From positions 13,144,001-13,208,000 of the forward strand of contig JANJGN010000034.1 in the NCBI GenBank assembly GCA_026770705.1: a DNA stretch of 64,000 nucleotides, in the 5' to 3' direction. Shown here piece by piece: positions 1-32,739 of this stretch. Origin of the DNA: Isurus oxyrinchus. Its lineage: Eukaryota. Below the pieces are notes generated by a model that had not been told where the DNA came from, made no database searches, and worked only from the letters and a program-made list of their open reading frames with translations. The translations under genes and the position numbers were made by a program. How positions within the stretch are numbered: position 1 is the stretch's first letter; the number at the start of each line of letters is the position of its first letter.

Positions 1-417
1 CACAGCCCCAGGGTACACCGTCCCACTTCCTAGAAGGTTGGAACTTAAAGTAAAAAGGGACATTCCTCAAAAAGCTCAAAAGGCAAATGGTCATTATCAC
101 TACTGCCGCTGTTTTCTTGGTGCAAAATCTGGATTTCAGATTGTGACAGCAAATGGCCACAAAACGGTCGAAGATGAGAGTGATGGTCAGCCAAACGGAA
201 CAGTCTATAGCAGCGTAACCCAGCATGGCGTTAGCGCTGCACACTGCCATGTAGAACAGGAATGAGAATGGGAAATAGCTGAAACTAAGTGTAGTGAGTA
301 TGACATTGAAGATAATGACCATTAGATCGGCTGTCGCCATGGAGACCAGGTAGAGAGAAACACCTTTGCTGAGGCCGCACTTTCCCCGAGACAGATTCAC
401 AATCGTCACTAAATTAG
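1..417 (-). CDS. GPR139/GPR142-like class A GPCR copy 1, exon 2 (partial; runs off the window start)
   Basis: Acceptor aaccttccag| at 418-419, phase 1. Open frame ANLVTIVNLSRGKCGLSKGVSLYLVSMATADL...VCS...FDRFVAICC...WDGVPWGC with no stop to base 1. TM2 Asp and a DRF motif are intact. Confidence 0.85.
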
Positions 418-3400
418 CTGGAAGGTTAATTGAGAAGCTGTTGAATATTGAGAAGGGTGATGAGCCATCATTACCACAGTGTGACCCAATGAAAGAATAA
501 TCATCGGGTAAAATAATCACAGTGACGTCACGTAGAGAGACACATTTAAACACCAGTTCTCTAATGGTTTGAAAAGTACAATTTAAAGTCTCATGAATTG
601 TTCATGAGAAGGCATGAAACATGTAGTGATTCAAACAAGATACTCTACAGCACTAGTTGGTATTAATAGCTCTGGGAAATAGGTTTTTTTAAAAACAGAT
701 TTGAATCTCTAAAGTGCACTTTATAGCCAATGAAATATGTTTTGAAGCGTAGTCACCATTGCTATGCATGAAACCCACAGCCCATCCTATGCACTGCAAG
801 ATCCCACAAACCGCCATGCAATGCTGACCAGCCAATCTGGTATTGGGATGTTGATGAAGGGATAAGTATTGGCCAGGACCCCGGGGATAAATGATGCCAT
901 GGAGAACCTTTTATATCCAGGAAAGCAAGCAGATGGAGCTTCGGTTTGACATCTCACTCCCAAAACACAGCACCTCAGACAGTGCAGCACACCACCAATA
1001 CTGCATTGGTGTATCAGCTCTGATATTTGTGGCTCACGTGCTGTACGAGAAGGTATGGTGCACTGTAATGAAGGGCCGGAGATAGCACATTACATGTTGA
1101 GGGATCGAGAATAGACAGCGGGTGAAATGTCCTTTCAAAGGACGTTTTGAGGTGTTGGAGTTCACACCCCGAGTTATTGGTTCACACAACAACTATTCCA
1201 ACATCCCACATTCGACTGCGTAGGTAGATGAAAGCAAATAAACCTAATGTATAGGATAAAGCAGCCCTCTTGATTGGCACCCCATCCACAAACATTCACT
1301 CCCTCCACCACTGACATACAGTGTCAGTAGTGTGTGTACCATCTACAAGATGCACTGCAGGAACTCACCAAGGCTCCTTCAACAGCACCTTCCAAACCCA
1401 CGACCACTACCATCTAGAAGGACAAGGGCAGCAGATACATGGGAACACCATCACCTGGAAGTTCCCCTCCAAGCCACTCACCATCCTGACTTGGAAATGT
1501 ATCAGCCGTTCCTTCACTGTCGCTGGGTCAAAACCCAGGAACCCCTTCCCTAACAGCACTGTGGGTATACCTACACTGAATGGACTGCAATGGTTCAAGA
1601 AGGCAGCTCACCACCACCTTCTCAATGGGCAACTAGGTATATGGGCAATAAATGCTGGCCCAGCCAGCGAAGCCGCCACCCTGTGAACAAATGTAAGTAA
1701 AACATAGTGGAACATTATGGGTAAATGTGATTAAGTTCAGGAAAAGCACTAACCTGGCCTGGCCATAATTAACAGGTAAGCAAATGTATTGCATAGCGGT
1801 CTCTAACTTCCTGATGTTTATCCTCTCGATGCCATAGAAATTTAAATGGCAACTGAGTGTCTGTTTCCGACACTGATCTGCATATGGTTGAGTGGAGAGG
1901 CTAAACGCATTAATTAACTGGGTTGCTGCTCTTTCCCCTAGAAAATGGAAGGCTGAGAAATGAACTGACCTTCATGAATATGTGACCATTGAATGGAGTG
2001 GACATGCCAAACTGGAGCCCTTTGGAAGTGGTAAGATCATCATGAACAAATCCAATAGGACATTCACGGGAGGCTCCCTTATTTAGCAAGCGGTTGGAAT
2101 ATGGAACCCCCGGCCACAAGAGGTATTTGAGATAAATAAAAGAGTTTAAGGGTAAACTAGGTAAGTTCACGGGCGAGCAAGGAGTACCAAGTTATTTTGG
2201 GAGGATTAGGGGTAGGAGACTCATGTGGAAATTCATCCCATGTGCCCTGTACCTCTGCTGAATATTCCATAGAATTATAATTAATTTCACTTAAAAAAAT
2301 CACATCAATTCAATTCAATTTCATTATACATATGGAGATTCGTTTCATTTTGGGTACTTTACTCATGGGCTAAAATAAAATTACATCTAAATGAATAATA
2401 ACAATTAAAAAAAAAGAATTAACCTATCAGAGATCTAAATTTAATTAACTATGCATCAATACGTGTTTAATTCATTCAAATAATCAGTCAGTGAGTCCCA
2501 GCCTAAGTACATATCCTCATCCATATATCAAACTCCTATTCACAGTTTTAAGGGCACTAATGAGTTCAGGAACGGACTTGCCTGCGTCGGAGGGATTGTA
2601 GCTCTGACCCTGAATGCATCCATTCAAAGTTAAAGTGCTCTACGGTTAAAATTCATCGAAAGCAGATTTCGCCAGGAGAGGTCTGTTGGTCAAATCTCTT
2701 TCTTGCCTGCTTCAAGAATCCTCAGCACTCTCAAGGGGCCTGCTGCTCTAAGACAACGGTACCAGTCGTGGCATCTATCAAGGACAGCGCCCTCAACCAC
2801 AGCCACATGGAAGAGTTTCCTGACTGTAGGATCACCTTCCAAATCCACGACATCTACCATCTAGAAGGTCGAGGGCTGCAGACACATGGGGAACAGCACC
2901 ACCTGGAAGTCCCCCTCCAAGCCACTCACCATCCTGACTTGGAAATATATCAGCCGTTCCTTCACTGTGGCTGGGTCAAAATCCTGGAACCCCCTCCCTA
3001 ACAGCACTGTGGGTGTACCTACACCACATGGACTGCAGCGGCTCAAGAAGGCAGCTCACCAACCACCTTCTCAAGGGGCAACTAGGAATGGGCAATAAAT
3101 GCTGGGCCCAGCCAGCGAAGCCCACGTCTCGTGAATGAATTTTAAGAAGTCGAGAAGTTTTTGATTTCTGGAGACTAATGTACATCGCTTGCCTACCACG
3201 CCTGAGCACTCTTCCCTCTCGTTCAACTGGCCAGCCTACTTTAACACCGAGATATCTGGAGCCGGCAACTACTTCAATTTCCAAACCATGAATCTTCGCA
3301 GGAGCCGTATCATTAACTGTCTTTTTTTTTTGCCGAACTAGTACTTTCACTTTGTTTTTGCTCCGTTTTGAAAGAATGGTTCCTGCGTCATTTTACGAAC

Positions 3401-8079: not shown

Positions 8080-9197
8080 CTTTTTTTTTGGAAAAATATA
8101 CTTTATTCATAAAATATCTGAAAGAACATTACAAAACATTTCCAAATTGCCATCACAATAAGTGCAATCATATTCCAACTTTCCACATAGATCATGAGAT
8201 GCTTCAATACAATCAGTGAACATACAGACATTTCAACTTGGTCATTACAGTCAGTCCAACAGTACAATGGGATTCAAGTTATGGACAGAGATCATGTTGC
8301 TTTCTGAGGTGCTTCAATACAATTGTGATACATTTAGTATTCACTATATACATTAGTTCTGAGTCATACAGCCCGAGGGGTCTTTACAGTTTCCAGCCCC
8401 TCGGTGCACTATGGCTGAAAGGTCTCGGACAGTGACCTTTCCCCATTGCGCCTTTGTGGCGGCTGCCCCAAGCTTTAGTGTGTCCCTCAGAACATAGACC
8501 TGGACCTTGGAATGTGCTAGTCTGCAACACTTGGTCAGGGACAACTCTTTGTGCTGGAAGACCAACAAGTTTCGGCCAGACCAGAGAGCATCTTTCACCG
8601 AGTTGATGATCCTCCAGCTGCAGTTGATGTCTGTCTTGGTGTGTGTCCCTGGGAACAGCCCGTAGAGCACAGAGTCCTGTGTCACAGAACTGCTCGGGAT
8701 GAACCTCCACAGAAACCACTGCATCTCTCTCCAGACCTTCTTTGCAAAGGCACAATCCATAAGGAGGTGAACAACGGTCTCGTCCCCACCACAGCCACCT
8801 CGAGGGCAATGTGCAGAGGGGGTGAGACTCCTGGCGTGTAGGAAGGATCTTACAGGGAGGGCCTTTCTCACCACCAGCCAAGCTACATCTTGGTGCCTGT
8901 TGGAAAGTTCTGGCGATGAGGCATTCTGCCAAATGACTTTGACAGTCTGCTCGGGGAACCATCCCATAGGATCCACCCTCTCCTTTTCCCTCAGGGCCCC
9001 TAAGATGTTACGTGCAGACCACTGCCTGATGGACTTGTGGTCAAAGGTGTTTCTCTGCATAAATTTCTCCACGAGGGATAGGGTGGTACAGCACGGTCCA
9101 ACTACTTGGAGCGTTCCGTGGCAGCGTGGCCAGACCCATCCTTCACTACACCAGGGACAGGTAGAACCTCAGCACGCAGTGACACTTGGTGTTTGCT
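8080..9197 (-). mobile_element. Tx1/L1-clade LINE, 3' part (ORF2 C-terminal zinc finger, 3' UTR, poly-A)
   Basis: ORF 8353-9072 contains CPRGGCGGDETVVHLLMDCAFAKKVW (zf-RVT-like). On the minus strand there is AATAAA and a poly-A tail at ~8080-8106. Confidence 0.85.
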
Positions 9198-15653: not shown

Positions 15654-15788
15654 CTATGTCTGTTTGACGATGCCGTACACAATGCCGTCTGGCTCAATAT
15701 TATCTTCACGGGGGCATTTCCTCTTCGTGGTATCTCCTACCTTCTGCTGCTGTATGTCGAGCGACGCATACACGATCTCACGGTGACC
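15654..15788 (-). CDS. TIGIT/PVRIG-like inhibitory Ig receptor, terminal coding exon with two ITIMs
   Basis: Acceptor gctttgtttcaacag|, phase 0. GHREIVYASLDIQQQKVGDTTKRKCPREDNIEPDGIVYGIVKQT* (TAG 15654-15656). IVYASL and IVYGIV both fit [ILVS]xYxx[LV]. Confidence 0.88.
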   Translation of the reverse strand, partial: GHREIVYASLDIQQQKVGDTTKRKCPREDNIEPDGIVYGIVKQT

Positions 15789-15967
15789 CTGTTGAAACAA
15801 AGCATGTTTCACCGCGTTGATTTCTTTTCAACGACAGATACTATGGCTTCTCTCAAATTGACCCCCACGCATTACGGAAGAATACAGGCATGTCTGCAGG
15901 TAAGAGCAGCATGGCTGTTCCGGTTTGATACGCAGGAGTTGTGGCCTGAAGCGAAGCTCTGCAAGAT

Positions 15968-16556
15968 ATGTATCGAACGCTAGTCAGGCCACAGCTGGAG
16001 TACTGTGTGCAGTTCTGGTCGCCACATTATAGGAAGGAGGTGATTGCACTGGAGGGGGTGCAGAGGAGATTCACCAGGATGTTGCCTGGGCTGGAACGTT
16101 TCAGCTATGAAGAGAGACTGGATAGGCTGGGGTTGTTTTCCTTAGAGCAGAGGAGGCTGAGGGGAGACCTGATTGAGGTATACAAAATTATGAGGGGGAT
16201 AGATAGGGCAGATAGGAAGAAACATTTTCCCTTAGTGGAGGGGGGTGGGGAGGGGGATGGGGGGGGCGGGTAGGCATCGATTTAAGGTAAGGGGCAGGAG
16301 GTTTAGAGGGGATTTGAGGATTTTTTTTTCACCCAGAGGGTGGTTGGAATCTAGAACTCACTGCCTGAGGGGGTGGGAGAGGCAGGAACCCTCACAACAT
16401 TTAAGAGGTGTTTAGATGAGCGCTTGAAACACCATAGCATACAGGGCTACGGGCCAGGAGCTGGAAAATAGGATTAGAATAGACGGGCGCTTGGTGGCCG
16501 GAGCGGAAACGATGGGCTGAAGGGCCTGTTTCTGTGCTGCCTAACTCTATGACTGT
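15968..16556 (+). mobile_element. CR1 LINE 3' end (in the last intron of the Ig receptor gene)
   Basis: YRTLVRPQLEYCVQFWSPHYRK...LEGVQRRFTRMLPGL...RRLRGDLIEVYKIM, followed by a CR1-type 3' UTR. Confidence 0.9.
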
Positions 16557-16955
16557 AAGTTTTTTTTTAAAAATGGAAGAGAGGCTCTCATTTCAAAACC
16601 ACAGGAGGTGCCAAAGCGTCTTCCAATGAAAGGTACACTTCCAAGTATTGTCAAGGGTGCAATTTGGGAAAAGCTGCAGCCAATCCATACTCAGTAAACA
16701 GTAAACATGATAATGTCAGAGAGTCATTTCCTTATTGTGACCTGGATTGGGGGCTATAAGTTAGCTAGGACACAGGAGATAGCGTCCTTGCTCACTAAAG
16801 GCATATTGGCAATGGGTTCTTTTGCAACCACGTAAGAGAACAGAAGTGACCTTGGTTTAATGTCAAAAGCAGCTCATTGTTTTAATCCTCACTCAGAACG
16901 GTAACAAACGATGCCCCGATTACCCGTGCGATCAAAGGCTTTTTGAATGACCTAC

Positions 16956-16993
16956 CTCGTCCGTTTCCTTCTTGGAAGCTTCGCTTTCCGGGG
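16956..16993 (-). CDS. TIGIT/PVRIG-like inhibitory Ig receptor, 38-nt cytoplasmic linker exon
   Basis: ttctttccctctcggtctag|CCCCGGAAAGC...ACGGACGAG|gtaggt. Phase 1-0, APESEASKKETDE. Bridges the phase-1 TM exon exactly to the phase-0 last exon. Confidence 0.78.
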
Positions 16994-17226
16994 CTAGACC
17001 GAGAGGGAAAGAATATCAAGAGGGTGGTTAGTCACTGGTGAATCCATGAGGTCAAAGTGCTCCCCTTCTGAATATAAATCTGTGCACACACTAACACCCG
17101 TGTGTGCAAGGAGCCGTTCTCAGCGTCCATGCAGTCCACCCACTACCTATGATAGACCTCCCTACCTGCAGCACTTAGCAACATGATGTGCATGACAACT
17201 CATTATCTTTCTCAGGATAATTTTAC

Positions 17227-17244
17227 CTCTGTGGGTCGACCCAT
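17227..17244 (-). CDS. Candidate 18-nt symmetric micro-exon (DGSTHR) of the Ig receptor cytoplasmic tail
   Basis: gttgtctgttag|ATGGGTCGACCCACAGAG|gtaaaa. Phase 1-1 and frame-preserving between the TM and linker exons; supported by splice signals only. Confidence 0.4.
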
Positions 17245-17344
17245 CTAACAGACAACATTTTAGATCTAGCTAGCTAGTGAGGCTTTTAGCAATTTTTTTA
17301 ATCTGTTTAACTAGTTAGATAAAGTTTTGAATAAGAGCCGAGAA

Positions 17345-17744
17345 NNNNNNNNNNNNNNNNNNNNNNNNNNNNNNNNNNNNNNNNNNNNNNNNNNNNNNNN
17401 NNNNNNNNNNNNNNNNNNNNNNNNNNNNNNNNNNNNNNNNNNNNNNNNNNNNNNNNNNNNNNNNNNNNNNNNNNNNNNNNNNNNNNNNNNNNNNNNNNNN
17501 NNNNNNNNNNNNNNNNNNNNNNNNNNNNNNNNNNNNNNNNNNNNNNNNNNNNNNNNNNNNNNNNNNNNNNNNNNNNNNNNNNNNNNNNNNNNNNNNNNNN
17601 NNNNNNNNNNNNNNNNNNNNNNNNNNNNNNNNNNNNNNNNNNNNNNNNNNNNNNNNNNNNNNNNNNNNNNNNNNNNNNNNNNNNNNNNNNNNNNNNNNNN
17701 NNNNNNNNNNNNNNNNNNNNNNNNNNNNNNNNNNNNNNNNNNNN
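17345..17744. other. Assembly gap (400 N) in the Ig receptor intron 3, probably a collapsed microsatellite
   Basis: N run flanked on the right by (TCCA)n-like sequence. Confidence 0.95.
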
Positions 17745-18248
17745 TCCCTCTGTGCGTCCGTCCATCCATCCATCAATATCTACCTATTAGCATTTATCAA
17801 ATCTATTTAAGTATCCATTGACCATATATCCGCCTTTCTGTCTGTCAGTCAACCCTGCTATGTTAGGATTATGTCTGGGCTTGTGTGTGAAGGGGCTGTA
17901 CTGTGTCAGAAGCACAGTGTGACATCTTAAGTACAGACAGGTATTATCAATCATTGTGGAAACTAGTCACTTTTATCCTGATTTACATATCAATAGAATT
18001 GATTTCTCTAAGATGCAAAACGTGAACAGTGTGTTCTGCAGGTAGAGGTGTGTCAGAAACGGGAATTTTGTCATTATTCACCAAACTAGGAAAGGAAAAC
18101 GTCATTTGGCAGATTACAGTCCAATGAATGTTGAAAACTATCAATGTTCTCGGTGCGCTCTCAGTGCAGAGTTCAGCGGCTGTGTTGGGGAGGCTGCCAG
18201 TCATTGGTGCAAGCCGAGGTCATAGTGCATTTGTAAAGGTCAAGTTAC

Positions 18249-18368
18249 CTTTCAGCTGTTGGCTCTTCCAACTTAGAAATGTGCGTGTTGCCAACAACAT
18301 TCCCAGCAGCAAAATAAGGCTCATCACCGCAAGGATGATATATTTCCTGCATGTTATCGGCATAGCAT
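18249..18368 (-). CDS. TIGIT/PVRIG-like inhibitory Ig receptor, exon 3 (short stalk + transmembrane helix)
   Basis: Acceptor ttccctctcacag|, donor AAAG|gtaact, 120 nt, phase 1-1. Reads DAMPITCRK-YIILAVMSLILLLGMLLA-TRTFLSWKSQQLK, with an uncharged hydrophobic core. Confidence 0.82.
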
Positions 18369-19770
18369 CTGTGAGAGGGAACATATTTCCAACAGGTGAA
18401 AGGAAATTCATTGTAGGATCCCTGTAGCATCACTGTTGCTCTTACTGTAACATTGCTTATCATCATTATTCTCATCAACATGCCCCACACCATGGGAGAA
18501 ATATATAGTGTACCTTGTGGATAATCTTGCCTCGTCAAAGTTATATATGGCACTCCTTCTGTTTAGTTCTTAATTTCTATAAGTTGTTTCACAGCTCGCT
18601 TCACTCTGAACAGAATTGATCCTGCCCTCAAACTTTTAACTACTTCATCTTTTTGCAGAGCTGTAAGAGTTTCAACAATTTCCCATTTTTACTTCCCTTT
18701 TGCTTCTAAATAGATTACCTGGGTTGAATTGGAATTTATTTATAGGTCCACCATTTCCGTTAATACAGCAACTTGCAGTCCCACGACCGCTACCATCTGG
18801 AAGGACAAGGGCACCAGACACATTGGAACACCGCCAACTCCAAGTTCCCCTCGCAATCACACGCCATCCTGACTTGGAAATATATCGGCCGTTCCTTCAC
18901 TGTCGCTGGGTCAATATCCTGGAATTCCCTCCCTAACAGCACTGCGGGTATACGTACACCACATGGACTGCAGCGGTTCAAGAAGGCAGCTCACCTCCAC
19001 CTTCTCAAGGGACAATTAGGGATGGGCAATAAATGCTGGCTGAGCCAGCGAAGCCTACAGCCCATGAAAGAATAACAGAAATATCAAATTGGGTAGGCTT
19101 GTTAAACTCCAAAGTGTGTTAACTGATCCTACACTGTTGGTGCAAGTTGGAATTAAATCATCGAACTTCAACATTTGTCCCATCAACATTGTTCGATTGA
19201 GTACATGTCTGAGTATATCTCAGGGCCCTTGAATTGATTTTTCAAATGTGTACATCTTCACGCTTTTGAGGGTTCCCCCCCCCCACCCCTTTCATGTGCT
19301 TTTGTCTCCTTAAGCTGTTAGCTTCTGAGGGAAGGGGGTTACCATGTATCCACATTGCTCAGTCTACCTGTGCTACCAGCTGTTATCAGCAGGTTACCAC
19401 ACAGTGGAAGCCCTCAATTTGACAACCTCAATGCAACTTCGAGGCAGGGAACTGTTGTACATATCCAGAACCACTAAGGTCAATTATGGCAGACCAGCCA
19501 ATACAAATTTGCCTGAGTATGGAACTCTGATTGAACATGTAATATTTTGGGGGCTTTTCGAAACCTCTCTAATCAGGTCCTGCCACTGCCATGCCACTGA
19601 CATGGATTTGATTGGAATTGTAAGTGAAATCCTTGAGGGGAATCTATCTCCCCACATCTTTCTAGATGTGCATGTGCAACATTTGCACCTCTCTAAACCT
19701 TCTCTCCCATTGACCCATTGAGCTGGTATCACAGAAGTATAATAATTCCCATAACATTATTGTGACTTAT

Positions 19771-19806
19771 TGTAAGAAGTAGGTTAATGGTGGGGTTTGG
19801 ACTTCT

Positions 19807-19844
<38 letters not shown>

Positions 19845-20644
19845 TGGGGGTGGGGGTGAAGGGGGTGAGGGATTTAATTGAATTGGAGGCAGCTGGTATG
19901 GAGGCTTTGACTCATCAAAAGAAGCTAGGTTTGAAATGCTAAATGCATAAACATGGCAAAAGTCTTAGAATGTAAGGCGAGGAGAATTTGCATTATTAGA
20001 TAAATCGGGGCAGTTTGAATTTCAAAGAGATGGTAGGCCCAGCAGTGTGTTTATTTTTCTCAAAGGTTACACACAGTATTAGCACCATTAGCAATAATTT
20101 ATACTATGAGAATAATAAGGTTCCAAAGACATATGGAAACAATGGAATTTACATTAAATGAGAGAAACATGGATAAAGGAGAATAATGCTATGTGTCAGG
20201 GGACGCAATGTAAGATCTAACAGAAGTGTGAGAAGCCTCCAGTATTTGTACATTAAGCTGCTGTCTACATAAACTGAAGCTGGGAGAAGCCACTTTGAAT
20301 TCTACTGTCCAGGGTATTGTGTTGACTTGCCTGGATCTATTTAAAATCTTTTTTATACTGTTGCTTTAATGGGGGTGTGACTGGAAGCTAGATTAATTAG
20401 GGATTTAAGGAATTATTATAGTAGTAACTTGTAGACCTATGTATGTGCTTGAAATCTTTATTTTGTTAATAAATATTTAATTTAGTTTTTTTTTAAATCT
20501 CTGAAGTCTTGGTGGACTTATTACTTCTGAATTCAGGGCAGGCATTTCAAACTAAATACAAACTGCAGAACTGTTGTGATAGCGTAATCAAGTTATCTCA
20601 TGGATTTGATCTGCTCGGCACACATTATCTGCCATATCAAAACA
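19771..20644 (+). mobile_element. Solo-LTR-like element
   Basis: TGT...ACA termini and an internal aataaatatttaattt block. Homologous to 21142-22532 and, in reverse, to ~30075-30832. Confidence 0.55.
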
Positions 20645-21141
20645 GTGGGCTTGCATCGCATGGTTCCAATTCTCAGTATCCAGCTCTATCTTGACAATTT
20701 CTATCAATGGCTTCCCTTTCAACAGCTGCACCATTCCCTCTGGAGTTCCCCATCCCATACCACCACCCCCCCCCCCCCCCACCACTCCCCACCCCACCCC
20801 CACCCCCACCAAAAGAACTTTCATTGTCTCCCTTATTATTCATGCATTTTCCAGCCTTCAGCACCATCAAAGGTGCTTTGGAAAAGTAAGCTGTCATTGT
20901 TGAAGTGTTATCAATACATTCTCTTGCTACCACATTGCTGTGTTCCCTTGTTCAACAGGGAAGTGTGATCTGCATGTTGTGGTATTTTCAAACATGGTGA
21001 CCAATGTGGACGTTTTCAGTCTGGAACCATCTGCTTTTCAGGAAGTCCCCAGGAAGCAGCAAAAAAATTGTGCCGAATTTCAGCAGGATGTTAACCTCTT
21101 GAGGGAAGTATAATAATTTTAATAATATTTTTCTGGTTTAT

Positions 21142-22532
21142 TGTGAAGTAGGTTTATGGGGGTAAGTAGGGTTGGGTCTGTCTGTGTGATTTAATTACAT
21201 TTGGTGTCAAGTAGACTGCAAGCTTGAAATCATCAAAAAAAAAAGCTAGATGCTTAACATGCTAATGAGTAAAGATGGATGCTGGCTTAGCACGAAGGGA
21301 ATTAGCCCTTATCTAAGGAAAGATGTACCAACACTGGAGGCAGTCCAGAAAAGTTTCACTAGGCTGATTCCAGGTATGGAGGGATTTTCTTATGAGGAGA
21401 GGTTGAGTAGGTTGGGCCTGTACTCATTGGAGTTTAGAAGAATGAGAGGCAACCTTATTGAAACATATAAGATTCTGAGGGGGCTTGACAGAGTAAATGC
21501 TGAGAGGTTGTTTTCCCTTGTGGGAGAGTCTAGGACCAGAGGGCATAATCTCAGAGTAAGGGGTCACCCATTTAAGACAGAGATGAAGAGGAATTTCTTC
21601 TCTCAGAAGGTAGTCAATCTGTGAAATTCTTTACTGCAGAGGGCTGTAGAGCCTGGGTTGCTAAGTATATTCAAGGCTGAGGTAGACAAATTTTTCACCA
21701 GTAAGGGAATCAAAGGTTATGGGGAAAAGACAGGAAAATGGAGTTGAGGATTATCAGATCAGCCAGACTCGATGGGCTGAATGGCCTACTTCTGCCCCTA
21801 TGTTTTATGATCTTATGGTCTAAATGAAGGGATTATTTGGATTTCAAAAGGATCTTAGTCTGTTTCCAACTAGCCAGATAAGCAAGGCTAAGGAGTGTGT
21901 TTATTTTTCCCAAAGGCACTGACAATATTGGCAACATGAAAGTTTTATATTACCAAGAAGAAACAATTTCAAAGACATATGGAGCAATAGAATTTATGTA
22001 TTAAAAGAGAGAAACATATATGAAGGAGAATGAAAGGCTTTGTGGGAGAAGGCCATGTAAGATCTAACAGGAGTTTGTGAAATAGCTTTAATGATGCCTC
22101 CAGCATTTTGCATAAGTCTGCCATACAATGAAACTGAATTTGGGGAAAAACCATTTGGAATTCCACTGTCAAGTGGGTATTGTGTTAATTTGCTGGTTCT
22201 GTTTTAAATCTAAAATCTTTTTTGGACTGCTTTCTTAAAGGGAGTGTGTAACTGGGGGTCATGTCAAATAGGAATTTTAGGAGTTATTATACTCATAAGT
22301 AATTGTAGTCTTATGTTTGTACTTGAAGTCTTTTATTTTGTTGATAAATATTTTAATTTAATTTTCTAAATCTCTCAAGGTCTTGGTGGACTCATTACTT
22401 CTTGATTCAGTGCAAACATTTTCTGGTAATGAATACTTTTATAAATAAATTTCAAAACCATTGTGATAGCGTGACCAGGCTTCCCTTGTAGGTTTGGTCC
22501 ACATGGCACACATCATCTGCTATGTCACAACA
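21142..22532 (+). mobile_element. Solo-LTR-like element (same family, CR1 nested)
   Basis: Collinear similarity with 19771-20644 from tgtgaagtagg to gcacacatcatctgctatgtcacaaca. Confidence 0.55.
21303..21820 (+). mobile_element. CR1 LINE 3' end nested in a solo-LTR-like element
   Basis: PYLRKDV..LEAVQKSFTRLIPGM...RTRGHNLRVRG...RNFFSQKVVNL. Confidence 0.88.
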
Positions 22533-23221
22533 GTATGGCCTGATTTAGTTACTCCCATTCGGGTAGAGTTGAACACACACATTCACAATTGTGTCAGCAA
22601 GGTACATTTGTCCTCATCCAACTGAGATAGCCTGATCTTTTTGAAGCATTGTAACCTTTTTCAAAAGCAAATTCTTCCATGAGGTGTGAGTGTTGTTGGA
22701 AATACCAGTGCAGGACTGAGGGAGTGATGCATGTTGGATGAGAGGTTAAACTGAAGGCCCATCATCTAGCTTGGCTGGGCAGAAAAGGCCCCATGGAACT
22801 AATCTGAAGAAGATGGGGGCCACAGCCCGAATTGCACTTGAGACGGTGGTGATGGGCCGCCTTCTTCAACCACTCCAGTCCTGCAGCCCTGGTTTTTTAG
22901 TACGACCGAGTGCCCATTTCATTTGCTGTGGATCTGGAGTCACATGTAGGCCAGGCCAGGTAAGGATAGCAGCAAAACCAGATGGATTTTCACCACATTC
23001 CATGATCCTTTCATGGCCATCATTACTAATACTACTTTTAGTGCCAGATTTAGGAGTCTGATTTAATTAATGAATTTAATTTCAATTCCATCAGCTGGCA
23101 TTTAAACCTCTGACCACACAGCCATCAGCCCAGGCCTCTGGTTTCACCAGTTCAGTGATACTACCATGATACCACAGTCATCCTGCATCGTGATGTCGAG
23201 GGTTTCTTTTTGTTAACCTAC

Positions 23222-23569
23222 CTGAAATGTTCAGTTTTGTTTTGCTGGAAAAGATTCCCTTGGGAAACGTTGTCCAGGAACAGGTGTAAATGCCCGAGTC
23301 GCTTTTGCTGGAGTTGTTTATCATAAGCGTGGCGTCCTGTTGAGAAGGGCGCCTGAAGTGGATGCGACTGGAGTTGGTCTCCCCTGGGTAACTTGTTCCG
23401 AGCCGGGGATGGTACACAGCCAGGTCTGCCTTCTTGGCAGGACTGCTCCAGGCGACACTCACCACTTCCACACCTGGGTCGGAAATGGTGACGGAGCATG
23501 GAAGGATCACCACCTGTCCCTTATAGCCCGTCACAGACAGCGATGTGTGTACCGTCACTGCACAGTGAA
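23222..23569 (-). CDS. TIGIT/PVRIG-like inhibitory Ig receptor, exon 2 (nectin/PVR-family IgV domain)
   Basis: Acceptor tttactttccag|, donor TCAG|gtaggt, 348 nt, phase 1-1. Translation has the B-strand Cys (VILPC), C-strand Trp (VSVAW) and DSGIYTC, plus the PVR-family motifs AX6G (AVYHPRLG) and TFPxG (TFPKG). Confidence 0.93.
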
Positions 23570-25529
23570 CTGGAAAGTAAATACACATTCAGCCAACATT
23601 GCTGCTGTTCGTTTTCTCTTTCGATCTTTGGTCTTAACACTTGCGTTCTTTCTTTTTCCCCCAAACTATAACATTTGTAAAGCAGAGTTCAAATTTGACA
23701 TTACATGTAGTGCAGTACAGGTCAGCACATTCCATGAGGTGTCTCATTACATTTGCCATTACGGATTTTGACTGCAATGCACATTGACACGGCAGGTCAA
23801 ACACGCTCTGCTTCTTGCAGTGCGAGGGGTTTAACAAGGCTCCCACTCCCTGGGTGGATGTTGGCGGCAGGATGGGCCGAACAGCCTCCTTCTAGTGCTG
23901 TAAAATGTAATGATTCTGCTCCAGGGAGCACATTCCAATTACACGGTGAGGAAGCCCACGGCTCTTTGCAGTCAGGGGACCATTTGCAGCCACCGAAAGG
24001 CTACAAGGGCTCTGCAGGATATTTATATTTCCCTCGAGGTCACTTTCTGCTCTCTCTCTCTCTCTCTTTCTGCTGAATTAACTACACGCAGCCGAAAATA
24101 ACCGCGTCCGCCAAATGCGGCCTCCAACAGGGCGAGGCAAGCGCTGCAGGAACTGTTGCTAATCCGTTTCTCGAAAAGTAAAGCGAGAACTGTCACTCGC
24201 GGGGGAGACAGCGCTGTTGTCTAACCGCGAGGGACCCGTTTTAGACAAGCATCGCACTGCGTTGCATCGAGGCGAAACCCGCCGCGGCGCAGTTGTTCAA
24301 TGCAAAGTGACTGTCCGAGTATTTATCTCCACCTCTCTCTCTCTCCCCCGCCACCACCACCCCCCACCACCCCCCCCCCCCCCCCAACCCCTGCCCTTTG
24401 AAGCGAACCACATTGTCTCACTAAGAGCTGGGACATGAACGTCGGGCATGAGAGAGACTCTCAGACCCAGCGCATGAATGAAAGCTTGGCACATTCTTCC
24501 ATTGCAGTCCCTATCCTCTGCGTGGCAGCAAGAGGAGCATCCGGAACTCTGCATCGCTCCCACAACATGGTATAAAAGTTTCTAATCAGCCCAGGCATCA
24601 GCTGCAATGGTTCGGCGAGCTGGAGGAGGTGCCTGTCGCTGCCAGAGATGAATCACCAGGGGCGAGAGAGAATTCGGCCTGCAAGTGCTCGGAGTATTTT
24701 TTTTTAAAACATTCATTCATGGGGTGTGGCTAGGCCCAACATTTATTGCCCACCCCTTAACTGCCCTTGTTCAGAGGGCAGTTCAGAGTCAACCACGTTG
24801 CTGTGGGTCTGGAGTCACATGTAGGCCGGGCCGACAAAAGGGCGGCAGATTTCCTTCCCTGCCCTGAGGGACATGTTCTGCCTGGGTGATGTCGACTGAG
24901 GGACGATGTTGATGACTCACGGCCCACGTCGCCTTCGAACTAGTGCCCTGGGAGTTTTCAAACCCACCCAAGGGAACTGATGGGACTTCAGTCGAGCCTC
25001 TCAGCTCCCCACCCCCCCCCCCCCTCCCCTCTTCTCTCCTCAGCACTGCATTGGAGTGTCAGTCTTGATTTTTGGGCTCAAGACTTGGAGTGGGAGTTGA
25101 ACCCAGGATCTTGTACTCAGGCTAACACCTGGCCCTGGACTGGTTAAGGGGGGTTGGCTGAGAGGCAAAGGGAGGAGGGGAGCTGGGGGGCTGGGCCTGG
25201 TGGGTAACCTAACCTCTATGAGTGCCAAAGGACTAAACTGTTTACATCAATATAAATTTCATTCCTGACTAAAGTCACAGATTGACAGGCAGACAGACCA
25301 GGAGTGAGAGAAACCAACAAACACAAACCTGAGCTAACAAAACAACAAGTTAGTGCTTAACAGGGGGCAGTGCCAGTGAATGAGCATAGAAATTAAGGAT
25401 AGAAAATGTTACATTTCATTATTGTCAATAGCTTAACATTAATCATTGCTGGGAGAGTTAGAGAGTTCATTCATTATTGATATGAAGTGGGCCAACAGTC
25501 TGTAGATATTGCTATTAATCTAGCGGTCG

Positions 25530-25642
25530 ATAAATAGATAAATAGATATATAGACAGATAGATAGATAGACAGTCAGACAGACAGTCAGACAGGCAGATG
25601 GACAGCCAGTCAGACAGTCAGACAGGCAGATGGACAGATAGA

Positions 25643-25682
<40 letters not shown>

Positions 25683-25860
25683 TGATAGATAGGCAGAGAA
25701 ATAGATGGATAGATAGACAGACTAATAGATGGATAGATAGATGGATGGATGGACCAATGGATGGATGGACGGATAAAAGAGAGATAGATAAAAGAATAGA
25801 TAGATAACATGATAGATTAGAAGATAGACAAACAGACAGGTCGAGGGATAGAGAGATGTA
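25530..25860. repeat. (GATA)n/(GACA)n/(GGAT)n compound microsatellite in intron 1 of the Ig receptor
   Basis: Direct inspection. Confidence 0.95.
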
Positions 25861-25905
25861 GAGAAATAATAACTTAATTCTTTCCGGGATGGATTTCGAA
25901 CTTAC

Positions 25906-25972
25906 CATAAGCTGTGGTGATGAGAATGAGCCACACACTGGAGAGCAAAAACAGATTAATGAATGGTTTCAT
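25906..25972 (-). CDS. TIGIT/PVRIG-like inhibitory Ig receptor, exon 1 (signal peptide)
   Basis: ATG at 25972 reads MKPFINLFLLSSVWLILITTAY, a basic N-terminus followed by a hydrophobic core. It ends G|gtaagt (consensus donor, phase 1), in phase with the IgV exon. Confidence 0.85.
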
Positions 25973-30832: not shown

Positions 30833-32739
30833 GGCATTTTATCCAGAATGGGGCTCAATACGTCACTGCCTCAGAGATAAAGGTGACTTTAGCTTTCCAC
30901 TGTGGTATATAACAGGCGGTTATCAGACACATAATCAGAGTGCACAGACCAAAGTTTCTTATGCCTTATCTTCCATTTTACACCAGAGTTTCAAGTTAAA
31001 ACAACTTCCAAAGCTGGTGAATTCCCAATTTGGCCAGGTATGGAACAGATGGTTTCTCCTTTATCTTTCACATTCGAGCAGGTCTGGACAAAGTGGGAGT
31101 AAACACTCGTGACATCGAGTAAAGAGAGACGTGGCCAGGGATTGGCGCCTCTTTCACATTTTAAACACAATTTAGCCCTGGCTACTTCTACAAATCTGTA
31201 GTCAAGAGGGAAAGGGGAACTTTCACTTTTGCCAGTAGGCCCAGAAGAGATGTTAATGAATTGGCCAGGGAAAGGAACAAAGCAGTTAAAATGGGTTCCA
31301 GAATAGGCGCACACATATTACTGACTGGTGGTTCGAGTGAAAATTCCTGTGGCCTCAACTCATCATTTGGTAACACTGTGGACAATCGGGTGCCGTGGGA
31401 GGCGGGGGTAGGGGGGTGGGGGTGGAGTGGGGGAGGGTGGGAGGACGGGGGGGGGGGGGGGGGGGGGCGGGGGGCAACAGAGTTATATGAACGGTCCGGG
31501 GAGCTGTATTTCCAGCCAGGGTTGTTACTTTCATGAGGATGCTAATTCAATGACGAGAGTAAAAGAATATTTCACCAACCTCTTCAGCTCCTCTCTGACC
31601 TTACTCTGGGTCAGTGCATAAATGACAATCTTTGTACAGGAGCTCAGGTAGAAGAGAATATTTCCAGATATATCTGCAACCGTTACTGGGTGATCGTAGC
31701 TAGGGTAAGAATGCCTGTTGGAGATCTCCACCAGTGAGAAAACACAGATCTTGGTCATCCACAGCAAGATAAAACTGCCCGATACAGCAAACAGCAGAAT
31801 GATGGATCTCCGCCTGTTGGCCATCTCGGCATCTCCTCGCTGCTCCCCCTTACTGGGACCCTGGAGGCCCCTGCGGGCTCGATTGGCCAGCACAATGTGC
31901 CTGACGGTCAGAGCATTGAGCAGCAGGATCAGGATGTAGGGGATCAATGGGTTCAGCAGGTGGTGGAGCCAGAAAAATGCCACCCAACTGGGCAAGGTGT
32001 AGAATTCCAGTCTGGTGGCACAGCCCCAGGGTACACCGTCCCATGTGCCATAAGGTCAGAACTTAAAGTAAAAAGGGACATTCCTCAAAAAGCTCACAAG
32101 GCAAACGGTCATTATTACCACCACCGCTGTTTTCTTTGTGCAAAAACTGGATTTCAGATTGTGACAGCAAATGGCCACAAAACGGTTGAAGATGAAAGCA
32201 ATGGTCAACCAAACGGAACAGTCTGTAGCAGCGTAAGCCAGCATGGCATTAGCACTGCATACCACCGTGTAGAACAGGAATGAGGCTGGGAGATTGTTGA
32301 AAAGGAGTGAGGTGAGTATGACCCTGAAGAAACTGATCAGTAGATTGGCTGCCGCCATGGAGACCAGGTAGAGAGAAACACCTTTGCCGAGGCCACACTT
32401 TCCCTGAGACACAATCATCACTAAATTAGCTGGAAGATAAATTGAGAAGATGTTGAACATTAAGAAGAGCCATCCTTACCACATGTTACCCAATGAAAAA
32501 CTAGTAATCGAGTAAAATAACTGCAATGAGCTTCTATTAACGTCGCATATATTACACACATTTAAAGGTCATTTGTGCGATGGTTTGAAAACACAAGGTC
32601 ATTCACTGTTGATGGGAAGACACAAGGAATATAGAAATTCCGGCAAGAAACTCTACCGGAGTGATGGGTATCAATAGTGCTGTGTAGAAAAAGTTTTAAA
32701 AAAAAGACTTGATTTTCTAATGTGGGTTTGGTGATCACT

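What the first reader, a model, noticed from the sequence alone, without database searches (positions are those of the whole stretch)
15654..25972. Hidden, intact single-IgV two-ITIM receptor of the TIGIT/PVRIG family in a cartilaginous fish
Seen: five minus-strand exons with GT-AG sites and matching phases (1,1,1,0) splice into a 708-nt stop-free CDS of 235 aa: signal peptide, IgV, short stalk, TM, and a tail with IVYASL and IVYGIV. Three of the five exons are invisible in the ORF track. Established: the AX6G and T(F/Y)PxG motifs are the lock-and-key signature of the nectin/PVR family (TIGIT, CD96, CD226, PVRIG, nectins). TIGIT and PVRIG are its single-V inhibitory members, and paired ITIMs recruit SHP-1/SHP-2. 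Inference: this is a shark nectin-binding immune checkpoint receptor. Its VSVAW strand lacks the Gln of the (V/I)(S/T)Q motif, as in PVRIG. Its two canonical ITIMs differ from the ITT+ITIM tail of mammalian TIGIT, so it may be a distinct lineage rather than a strict ortholog.
Basis: partly seen in the sequence, partly recalled or inferred. Interest (0 to 1): 0.85.

Follow-up and report, generated by a model that had tools for sequence, protein, structure and literature searches.

The report
Shark single-V nectin-family inhibitory receptor gene
This is a real, transcribed shark gene for a small membrane receptor with one nectin-type Ig domain and two inhibitory tyrosine motifs; it is built like the checkpoint receptor TIGIT, but nothing here shows it is TIGIT's counterpart, and relatives already carry automatic annotations of it.

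Summary
Five minus-strand exons with AG/GT sites and phases 0,1,1,1,0 join into a 708-nt, 235-aa reading frame: signal peptide, one IgV, TM, and two ITIMs (IVYASL, IVYGIV). The N gap lies inside intron 3 and hides no coding exon. Spliced RNA contigs join exon 2 to exon 3 exactly as predicted. An NCBI model from basking shark (235 aa) is colinear with all five exons. Orthologues occur in five shark orders, with the lock (AX6G), the key (T[F/Y]P) and the first ITIM invariant.

The V domain clearly belongs to the nectin/PVR family, but it resembles nectin-1, nectin-2 and PVR first domains far more than TIGIT. It fails the PVRIG Pfam threshold. An axolotl TIGIT control matches human TIGIT specifically. 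V-domain trees cannot settle orthology.

Verdict: a new member of a known kind, a shark-wide single-V nectin-family inhibitory receptor. It is annotated in relatives under inconsistent names. The ligand and signalling are inferred. The scan had noted the neighbouring nectin-like cluster before, but not this gene.

The parts
25906..25972 (-). Exon 1, coding part: ATG at 25972-25970 and the signal peptide (residues 1-22 plus the first base of codon 23). The 5' UTR extends upstream to an unknown point.
   Evidence: A at -3, in-frame stop 29 codons upstream, GTAAGT donor. It is 20/22 identical to P0151 and identical to P0001 residues 1-22.
23222..23569 (-). Exon 2: IgV domain (residues 23-139), phase 1-1. 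It holds C47, W63, C119, the lock A73-G80 (23397-23420), the key T123-F-P125 (23262-23270), V59-S-V61 in place of (V/I)(S/T)Q, and sequons N88, N108 and N136.
   Evidence: Pfam V-set 8e-16. PDB nectin-1 D1 9e-15. RNA contigs cover it and end at its acceptor.
18249..18368 (-). Exon 3: short stalk with C145 and the transmembrane segment (about residues 148-170, 18274-18342). It is 120 nt, phase 1-1, so skipping it would stay in frame.
   Evidence: Helix 144-177 in the model of the orthologue. It is spliced to exon 2 in X1 and X2 contigs. TM-less isoforms are modelled in Heterodontus and Stegostoma.
16994..18248 (-). Intron 3, which holds the assembly gap 17345-17744.
   Evidence: One search lists the N runs. 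P0151 is colinear across the exon 3 to exon 4 boundary, so no coding exon is missing.
16956..16993 (-). Exon 4: 38-nt cytoplasmic micro-exon (residues 179-191). It shifts the phase from 1 to 0.
   Evidence: It is 11/12 identical to P0151 residues 180-191. The junction was not seen directly in RNA.
15654..15788 (-). Exon 5, coding part: tail with ITIM 1 (I196-L201, 15759-15776), ITIM 2 (I227-V232, 15666-15683) and the TAG stop at 15654-15656. The 3' UTR continues downstream.
   Evidence: It is 38/42 identical to P0151. The motifs are conserved in all full-length orthologues. The length of the X1 contig beyond exon 3 (515 nt) fits exon 4 plus 477 nt of exon 5 (inference).
18369..23221 (-). Intron 2 (4853 nt). 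It is removed in RNA contigs, is rich in interspersed repeats, and holds no relic C-set exon.
   Evidence: One search shows the joint 18368|23222 in X1 and X2, very high contig depth at 18740-19137, 21327-21923 and 22919-23117, and the DNA run X7 covering the intron. In one search, tblastn with the 3-Ig receptors finds nothing there.
23570..25905 (-). Intron 1. It is retained in one RNA contig.
   Evidence: X2 contig 8 runs from exon 2 on through the acceptor to 23700, the end of the stretch laid.

Best explanation
An intact, transcribed five-exon gene encodes a 235-aa type I membrane protein. It has a signal peptide, one nectin/PVR-type IgV, a short stalk with a cysteine, one TM helix, and a tail of about 65 residues with two tyrosine motifs 31 residues apart (Y198 and Y229). 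In this species both motifs are ITIMs. In other sharks the second is an ITSM.

The gene belongs to an orthologous group found in at least five shark orders. It sits next to a cluster of 3-Ig nectin-like ITIM/ITAM receptors.

Likely mechanism (inferred): the V domain binds another nectin-family V domain face to face through the invariant lock (AX6G) and key (T[F/Y]P). Src-family kinases then phosphorylate the two tyrosines, and the pair recruits the tandem SH2 domains of SHP-2/SHP-1, which damps activation of the leukocyte that carries the receptor.

In architecture and probable role it is TIGIT-like. By V-domain sequence it is nectin-like, and by its tail it resembles its 3-Ig neighbours. I therefore read it as a separate elasmobranch lineage of the nectin/PVR receptor family, not a demonstrable TIGIT or PVRIG orthologue.
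For: Gene structure and frame.

Transcription and splicing: the exon 2-3 joint is seen in two RNA runs of one sample. Exon edges 18249 and 23569/70 are used in two species.

Orthologues:
- P0151 (Cetorhinus, 235 aa) is colinear with all five exons at about 91% identity.
- Further orthologues come from Carcharodon, Rhincodon, Stegostoma, Heterodontus, Pristiophorus and Heptranchias.
- They form a clade with 87/95 support (99*).
- Invariant across them are C47, W63, A73, G80, C119, W121-T122-T123, P125 and G127.
- ITIM 1 is present in every full-length member. The second motif is an ITIM or an ITSM.

Family: Pfam V-set 8e-16. PDB sequence and profile searches are led by nectin-1, -2, PVR, nectin-3, CD226 and CD96. 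The Foldseek matches are nectin, PVR and TIGIT V domains at TMt 0.8-0.9. The lock and key motifs are described for this family in PMC9263721.

Neighbourhood: the Heptranchias model P0002 fuses the orthologue to a downstream 3-Ig ITIM/ITSM receptor. The 3-Ig receptors P0177 and P0178 lie on the same Cetorhinus contig as P0151, and the same holds in Carcharodon and Heterodontus.

Tails: they resemble those of the 3-Ig ITIM receptors, with shuffle p of 0.001 or less for the Heterodontus tail, 0.0005-0.0045 for the Pristiophorus tail, and 0.0015-0.05 for the window's exon 5.
Against: - No ligand, phosphorylation, SHP binding, cell type or tissue has been shown. The runs are coded and their RNA status was a guess until the spliced contigs were seen.
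- Three of the four junctions were not seen in RNA of this species.
- The Gln of the (V/I)(S/T)Q motif is replaced by Val or Ile in all eight shark sequences of this clade, the window's included, so the interface may differ from the canonical one.
- ITIM-bearing nectin-family proteins can also be ligands or adhesion molecules; PVR itself carries an ITIM (PMC7286890).
- The tail resemblance rests mostly on short motif regions that could be convergent.
- The 'separate lineage' reading is not proven. The AU test does not reject a clade with axolotl TIGIT (p 0.66).
Confidence: 0.62

Rival explanations
1. It is the true elasmobranch orthologue of TIGIT. The shark copy kept an ancestral nectin-like V domain and an ITIM/ITSM pair, while tetrapod TIGIT diverged fast in both the V domain and the tail.
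For: - The architecture is the same: signal peptide, one V domain, TM and an inhibitory tail.
- NCBI names the whale-shark orthologue 'TIGIT-like'.
- The nearest ESM Atlas cluster is 'TIGIT-like' at 0.97.
- The profile still reaches human TIGIT at E 3.5e-7.
- A tree constrained to hold the shark clade with axolotl TIGIT has a log-likelihood 2 units higher than the free tree, with p-AU 0.66.
- The axolotl TIGIT branch is very long (3.15), as fast divergence would predict.
Against: - The V domain scores 77 bits on nectin-1 but 33 on TIGIT.
- Structure-based identity is 21-22% to TIGIT against 33-36% to nectin-1/2. Identity to axolotl TIGIT is 23% at 31 bits.
- Axolotl TIGIT keeps 87 bits to human TIGIT, so TIGIT V domains are not generally unrecognisable across large distances.
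- The AU test equally allows a clade with the shark 3-Ig receptors (p 0.48).
- The local neighbours are GPR139-like genes and nectin-like receptors, which say nothing about the TIGIT locus.
Confidence: 0.25
2. It is a PVRIG (CD112R) orthologue.
For: It has a single V domain with an inhibitory tail. There is a weak Pfam Ig_PVRIG match (22.9 bits, E 1e-4; 19.3 bits for P0151).
Against: The Pfam match is below the 31.5-bit cut-off. No PVRIG chain is among the best 60 PDB sequences for the shark profile, nor among the listed Foldseek matches, although PVRIG complexes are in the library.
Confidence: 0.03
3. It acts mainly as a ligand, decoy or adhesion partner for the neighbouring 3-Ig paired receptors or for classical nectins, rather than as a signalling checkpoint receptor on lymphocytes. 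Its ITIMs would play a secondary role, as the ITIM of PVR does.
For: The V domain is nectin-like, and nectins and PVR are ligands as well as receptors (PMC7286890; PMC9263721). TM-less, possibly soluble isoforms are modelled in two species. The gene is adjacent to the paired receptors.
Against: Both tyrosine motifs and their spacing are conserved across five shark orders, which argues for a signalling role. A single-V form with a short stalk is typical of receptors such as TIGIT rather than of adhesion nectins.
Confidence: 0.08
4. It is a chance chain of exon-like pieces or a decaying pseudogene.
For: Four of the five exons are short, and three junctions were not seen in RNA here.
Against: Spliced RNA contigs exist. 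Full-length colinear orthologues exist in several orders. The frame is stop-free, and both the interface and the motifs are conserved.
Confidence: 0.02

Closest known systems
TIGIT (T-cell immunoreceptor with Ig and ITIM domains)
   Same: One nectin/PVR-family IgV with lock and key motifs, one TM segment, and a short inhibitory cytoplasmic tail. The exon plan is signal / V / TM / tail. The V fold superposes at TMt 0.87-0.89.
   Different: V-domain identity is only 21-23% and the profile score is 33 bits against 77 for nectin-1. The Gln of the (V/I)(S/T)Q motif is absent. There are five exons, with a 38-nt micro-exon. Orthology is unresolved.
Nectin-1, nectin-2 and PVR first (V) domains
   Same: These are the closest sequences. 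Nectin-1 D1 scores E 9e-15 with the single sequence and 1.5e-20 with the profile. Structure-based identity is 36% to nectin-2 D1. The stretch after the lock shows the same pattern, AVYHPxxGxSYP. PVR also carries an ITIM (PMC7286890).
   Different: Nectins and PVR have three Ig domains (V-C-C), and nectins have long tails with PDZ-binding motifs (PMC7286890). This protein has the V domain only, and intron 2 holds no C-set relic.
Shark 3-Ig 'nectin-1-like' paired ITIM/ITSM and ITAM receptors in the adjacent cluster (for example P0178 and P0177 of Cetorhinus)
   Same: They share the same genomic cluster and contigs and have nectin-family V domains. The inhibitory members have a similar tail with an IVYA(S/T)L-type ITIM, then about 25-30 residues, then a T/I-x-Y-x-x-V motif close to the C terminus.
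   Different: Their V domains form a separate, well-supported clade (98*) at about 32-36% identity. They have two extra C-type domains. No activating twin of the single-V gene was found in the window.
PD-1-type ITIM plus ITSM tails
   Same: In horn, whale and zebra sharks the second motif is TxYxx(V/L), an ITSM, and it follows an ITIM at a spacing suited to tandem SH2 domains.
   Different: The V domain belongs to a different family (CD28/B7-type against nectin-type). In this window's species the second motif reads as an ITIM (IVYGIV).

Membership tests
Nectin/PVR-family V domain | V-set Ig fold with the canonical Cys-Trp-Cys core | tested here: met
   Pfam V-set 8.1e-16. C47, W63 and C119 are invariant. 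The model of orthologue P0151 has pLDDT of about 82-93 over most of the V domain (73 in one block of ten).
Nectin/PVR-family V domain | Lock motif AX6G | tested here: met
   A73-VYHPRL-G80. A73 and G80 are invariant in all eight shark sequences. The motif is defined in PMC9263721.
Nectin/PVR-family V domain | Key motif T(F/Y)P | tested here: met
   T123-F124-P125. T123 and P125 are invariant, with F or Y between them.
Nectin/PVR-family V domain | (V/I)(S/T)Q motif | tested here: not met
   The window reads V59-S60-V61. The other sharks have VSI, VDV or VDI. The local scan flags no VSQ in this clade, although many relatives have it.
Nectin/PVR-family V domain | Best sequence and structure matches lie within the family | tested here: met
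   The top PDB hits are nectin-1, -2, -3, PVR, nectin-4, CD226 and CD96. Foldseek gives the same set plus TIGIT.
TIGIT orthologue | Single IgV plus TM plus inhibitory tail | tested here: met
   joined translation checked locally; TM and motif scan of the orthologues.
TIGIT orthologue | V domain specifically closest to TIGIT | tested here: not met
   TIGIT is absent from the best 60 hits of the single-sequence search. It scores 33 bits against 77 for nectin-1 with the profile. In the control, axolotl TIGIT scores 87 bits on human TIGIT and 19 on PVR.
TIGIT orthologue | Groups with TIGIT in a phylogeny | tested here: inconclusive
   The free tree puts axolotl TIGIT elsewhere on a branch of length 3.15. 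The AU test does not reject a joint clade (p 0.66), nor a clade with the 3-Ig shark receptors (p 0.48) or with the eel 'TIGIT-like' proteins (p 0.16). Only one true TIGIT sequence was available.
TIGIT orthologue | ITT-like motif plus a single ITIM in the tail | tested here: not met
The reference list seen names TIGIT's ITT-like motif only in a title.
TIGIT orthologue | Conserved synteny with the TIGIT locus | not testable with these tools
PVRIG (CD112R) | Pfam Ig_PVRIG (PF25456) above its gathering score | tested here: not met
   22.9 bits (window exon 2) and 19.3 bits (P0151) against a 31.5 cut-off.
ITIM-bearing inhibitory immunoreceptors | Canonical (S/I/V/L)xYxx(I/V/L) in the cytoplasmic tail, conserved among orthologues | tested here: met
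   IVYASL and IVYGIV. The first motif is in every full-length orthologue. The second is an ITIM or an ITSM.
ITIM-bearing inhibitory immunoreceptors | Phosphorylation-dependent recruitment of SHP-1/SHP-2 | not testable with these tools
   This needs biochemistry.

The most novel reading that the evidence does not exclude
This gene is the cartilaginous-fish counterpart of TIGIT. The nectin-TIGIT checkpoint axis, recently grouped with amniote-age genes (PMC13262535), would then predate the split of cartilaginous and bony vertebrates. It would have begun with a nectin-like V domain and an ITIM/ITSM tail, inside a cluster of paired nectin-like receptors.
Probability: 0.25. Interest if true: 0.7.

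Novelty: new member of a known kind. Interest (0 to 1): 0.45.

Why it matters
Receptors that read nectin-family ligands (TIGIT, CD96, CD226, PVRIG) set activation thresholds of T and NK cells. A 2026 survey of human IgSF conservation places CD96, CD226 and TIGIT in its amniote group (PMC13262535).

A conserved, expressed, single-V nectin-family receptor with a tandem inhibitory tail in sharks shows that this kind of receptor exists at the base of jawed vertebrates. That holds whether it is an old TIGIT relative or a parallel invention. It also sits next to a cluster of paired nectin-like receptors.

It gives comparative immunologists a defined gene to test for ligand and for SHP recruitment. 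It also shows that the names given to it by automatic annotation (nectin-1-like, -2-like, -3-like, MPZ-like, TIGIT-like, uncharacterized) are unreliable.

Tried and rejected
- **Paralogues in the window:** tblastn with each exon found none.
- **Relic C-set exons in intron 2**, which would show descent from a 3-Ig gene: none were found. There is only a weak C2-like hit outside the gene at 30958-31185 (E 0.005), with no Pfam support.
- **Word-index protein search:** with P0151, with a 14-sequence alignment and with the Conger 'TIGIT-like' protein, it returned almost only sharks and eels. One true TIGIT (axolotl P0203) came out of the third search. No PVRIG or CD96 sequence was obtained, and CD226 only from teleosts (in the tree), so the tree lacks PVRIG and CD96.
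- **Poly(A) signal:** no AATAAA or ATTAAA lies within 750 nt after the stop, so the 3' end is undefined.
- **Literature:** searches for a described shark TIGIT or nectin-family ITIM receptor found nothing.
- **Complex prediction:** not used. No specific partner is claimed, and any two nectin-family V domains would probably dock.
- **Joined model:** the joined 235-aa model was translated locally only to check the frame. It was not sent to any search or fold tool. Searches used single exons by reference and the orthologue P0151, and the structure model is of P0151.

Full report
**1. Observation**

I read the five claimed exons on the minus strand and checked them by script.

| Exon | Coordinates | Length | Content |
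|---|---|---|---|
| 1 | 25972-25906 | 67 nt | ATG, signal peptide |
| 2 | 23569-23222 | 348 nt | IgV |
| 3 | 18368-18249 | 120 nt | stalk and TM |
| 4 | 16993-16956 | 38 nt | cytoplasmic micro-exon |
| 5 | 15788-15654 | 135 nt | tail, ending in TAG |

- Every internal exon follows a pyrimidine-rich tract and AG. Every intron starts with GT. The phases are 0,1,1,1,0.
- The joined frame is 708 nt, or 235 codons plus stop.
- The ATG has A at -3 and is the first in-frame ATG after an upstream stop.
- The protein reads: signal peptide; IgV with C47, W63 and C119; lock A73-G80; key T123-F-P125; stalk with C145; TM at about 148-170; then IVYASL (Y198) and IVYGIV (Y229).
- I made the joined translation only locally, to check the frame. 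All database searches used single exons by reference or the orthologue found with them.

**2. The assembly gap**

The N run 17345-17744 lies inside intron 3 (16994-18248) and touches no exon. The basking-shark orthologue P0151 goes from the exon 3 residues (140-178) directly to the exon 4 residues (180-191), and it has the same total length of 235 aa. No coding exon is therefore hidden in the gap.

**3. Transcription**

Runs holding exon 2 were found. Four of them were laid on 17745-23700.

- In X1, a 1561-nt contig lies on 18249-18368 and continues without a break on 23222-23570, with 0-1 mismatches. That is the predicted exon 2-3 junction.
- X2 is from the same sample. It has a 722-nt contig with the same joint, but this contig runs on through the exon 2 acceptor into intron 1. 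It is an unspliced or intron-retaining form.
- In X5, from a second species, pieces stop exactly at 18249 and 23570 while the contigs continue with letters that do not fit the adjacent intron.
- X7 covers the introns evenly and is therefore DNA.

So the gene is transcribed. One junction and two further exon edges are confirmed. The other three junctions lay outside the single 6-kb stretch I was allowed.

Two of the second species' differences in exon 2 (E57K and K69E) are the residues seen in the great white shark protein P0001. The window is therefore probably from a lamnid close to Carcharodon. This is an inference.

**4. Orthologues**

An exhaustive HMMER search with exon 2, followed by name look-ups, gave these relatives:

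| Protein | Species | Length | NCBI name | Note |
|---|---|---|---|---|
| P0151 | Cetorhinus maximus | 235 aa | uncharacterized LOC144671520 | colinear with all five exons |
| P0001 | Carcharodon | 143 aa | nectin-2-like | truncated; 97% identical in the V domain |
| P0004 | Rhincodon | 227 aa | TIGIT-like | |
| P0006 | Stegostoma | 238 aa | nectin-1-like | lacks the TM exon |
| P0154, P0005 | Heterodontus | 232, 192 aa | MPZ-like X1, nectin-3-like X2 | X2 lacks the TM exon |
| P0008 | Pristiophorus | 228 aa | nectin-2-like | |
| P0002 | Heptranchias | 688 aa | nectin-2-like | fused to the next gene, a 3-Ig ITIM/ITSM receptor |

- P0151 matches the exons at 20/22, 105/115, 35/39, 11/12 and 38/42 identical residues, with the split codons at the predicted places.
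- The alignment shows the lock, the key and the surrounding WTT(F/Y)PxGxFS stretch invariant across five shark orders.
- The first ITIM is always present. The second motif is either an ITIM (I/V at -2) or an ITSM (T at -2).
- The gene is old, constrained and already modelled by automatic annotation, though under inconsistent names. I found no paper that describes it.

**5. Which family**

- Exon 2 is a V-set domain (8e-16). Ig_PVRIG matches only below its threshold (22.9 bits against 31.5).
- Against the PDB, the single sequence hits nectin-1 D1 (9e-15), then nectin-2, nectin-3, PVR, nectin-4, CD226 and CD96. TIGIT and PVRIG are not among the best 60.
- A profile of the shark orthologues scores as follows:

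| PDB protein | Bits |
|---|---|
| nectin-1 | 77 |
| nectin-2 | 66 |
| PVR | 56 |
| nectin-3 | 56 |
| CD226 | 50 |
| CD96 | 39 |
| TIGIT | 33 |
| nectin-4 | 32 |
| PVRIG | not listed |

- The AlphaFold model of P0151 is confident over the V domain. Foldseek gives nectin-2 D1 at 36% identity, nectin-1 at 33-34%, PVR at 28-29% and TIGIT at 21-22%, with TMt of 0.87-0.89 for TIGIT.
- As a control, axolotl TIGIT (P0203) hits human TIGIT at 87 bits and PVR at only 19. It is 23% identical to the shark protein.
- Membership of the nectin/PVR V-domain family is therefore firm. A specific TIGIT or PVRIG affinity of the V domain is not.

**6. Phylogeny**

- A quick tree of 102 V domains and a careful tree of 39 both recover the shark single-V clade.
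- Its sister is a second single-V ITIM/ITSM lineage (Mustelus P0035 plus P0027).
- The shark 3-Ig receptors form a clade of their own.
- The eel 'TIGIT-like' proteins sit among nectin-like sequences.
- Axolotl TIGIT sits on a very long branch.
- AU tests reject none of the alternatives: with TIGIT p 0.66, with the 3-Ig shark receptors p 0.48, with the eel 'TIGIT-like' proteins p 0.16.
- The 115-column V domain cannot decide orthology.

**7. Tail and neighbourhood**

- The tail motifs and their 31-residue spacing differ from TIGIT's. They resemble the ITIM/ITSM tails of the shark 3-Ig nectin-like receptors. Shuffle p is 0.001 or less for the Heterodontus tail, 0.0005-0.0045 for the Pristiophorus tail, and 0.0015-0.05 for the window's own exon 5.
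- Those receptors lie on the same contigs in three species. The Heptranchias model is fused directly to one of them.
- Earlier notes of this scan place such paired ITIM/ITAM genes just before the window's start.
- Inside the window there is no paralogue and no relic C-set exon in intron 2. The flanking genes are GPR139-like GPCRs and retroelement remains.

**8. Mechanism**

Shown:
- An intact, transcribed gene.
- A nectin-family V domain with a conserved lock and key.
- A TM segment.
- Two conserved tyrosine motifs.

Inferred from established knowledge of the family (PMC9263721) and of ITIM/ITSM signalling:
- Face-to-face V-V binding to a nectin-family ligand.
- Tyrosine phosphorylation and SHP-1/SHP-2 recruitment by the motif pair.
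- Inhibition of the carrying leukocyte.

The constant loss of the motif Gln suggests an altered interface. The ligand, the cell type and the signalling are all untested.

**9. Verdict**

This is a shark-wide single-V inhibitory-type receptor of the nectin/PVR family. It is TIGIT-like in design, but it has a nectin-like V domain and a tail like that of its 3-Ig neighbours. Orthology to TIGIT remains possible, at about one in four. Orthology to PVRIG is unlikely. It is a new member of a known kind and of moderate interest.

Noticed in passing
window 2-601 (-) and 31534-32475 (-): Two intronless GPR139-like GPCR genes flank the receptor gene. Pfam 7tm_1 matches them, and the best PDB hit is GPR139. 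The copy at 31.5-32.5 kb has an in-frame stop at 32056-32058, so it may be a pseudogene. The copy at the window's start runs off the window.
   Followed up: partly
window 18249-18368 (exon 3); P0005 and P0006: The TM exon is 120 nt with phase 1 on both sides, so skipping it keeps the frame. NCBI models in Heterodontus (isoform X2) and Stegostoma lack exactly this exon. That would give a secreted V-plus-tail form, which recalls the soluble PVR isoforms.
   Followed up: partly
window 23570-23700 (intron 1): One RNA contig (X2, 722 nt) is spliced at exon 2-3 but reads through the exon 2 acceptor into intron 1. Intron-1-retaining or unspliced transcripts are therefore present in that sample.
   Followed up: no
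window 23432, 23468, 23483 (exon 2): The second species differs at E57K and K69E. L79H is a further difference, seen in P0001. All three are non-synonymous. The RNA of the window's own species shows S52A against the assembly. The numbers are too small for a selection test.
   Followed up: partly
window 18740-19137, 21327-21923, 22919-23117 (intron 2): These stretches have enormous summed contig depth in all runs, with many partial joints. They are interspersed repeats that are abundant in both RNA and DNA runs.
   Followed up: no
window 30958-31185 (-): There is a weak tblastn match (E 0.005, 30% over 83 aa) to the third Ig domain of the Cetorhinus 3-Ig receptor P0178. It has no Pfam support. 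It could be a decayed Ig exon or chance.
   Followed up: partly
window 8353-9072 (-): An ORF carries a zf-RVT domain (reverse-transcriptase zinc-binding region). It is a retroelement remnant downstream of the gene.
   Followed up: no
window 53090-54130 (+): A 346-aa ATG-started ORF with no Pfam match. I did not examine it further.
   Followed up: no
P0035 (Mustelus asterias) and P0027: A second single-V lineage carries an ITIM (IEYAAL) plus an ITSM (TVYATV) and is sister to the clade of this gene. It may be the carcharhiniform orthologue or an old paralogue.
   Followed up: partly
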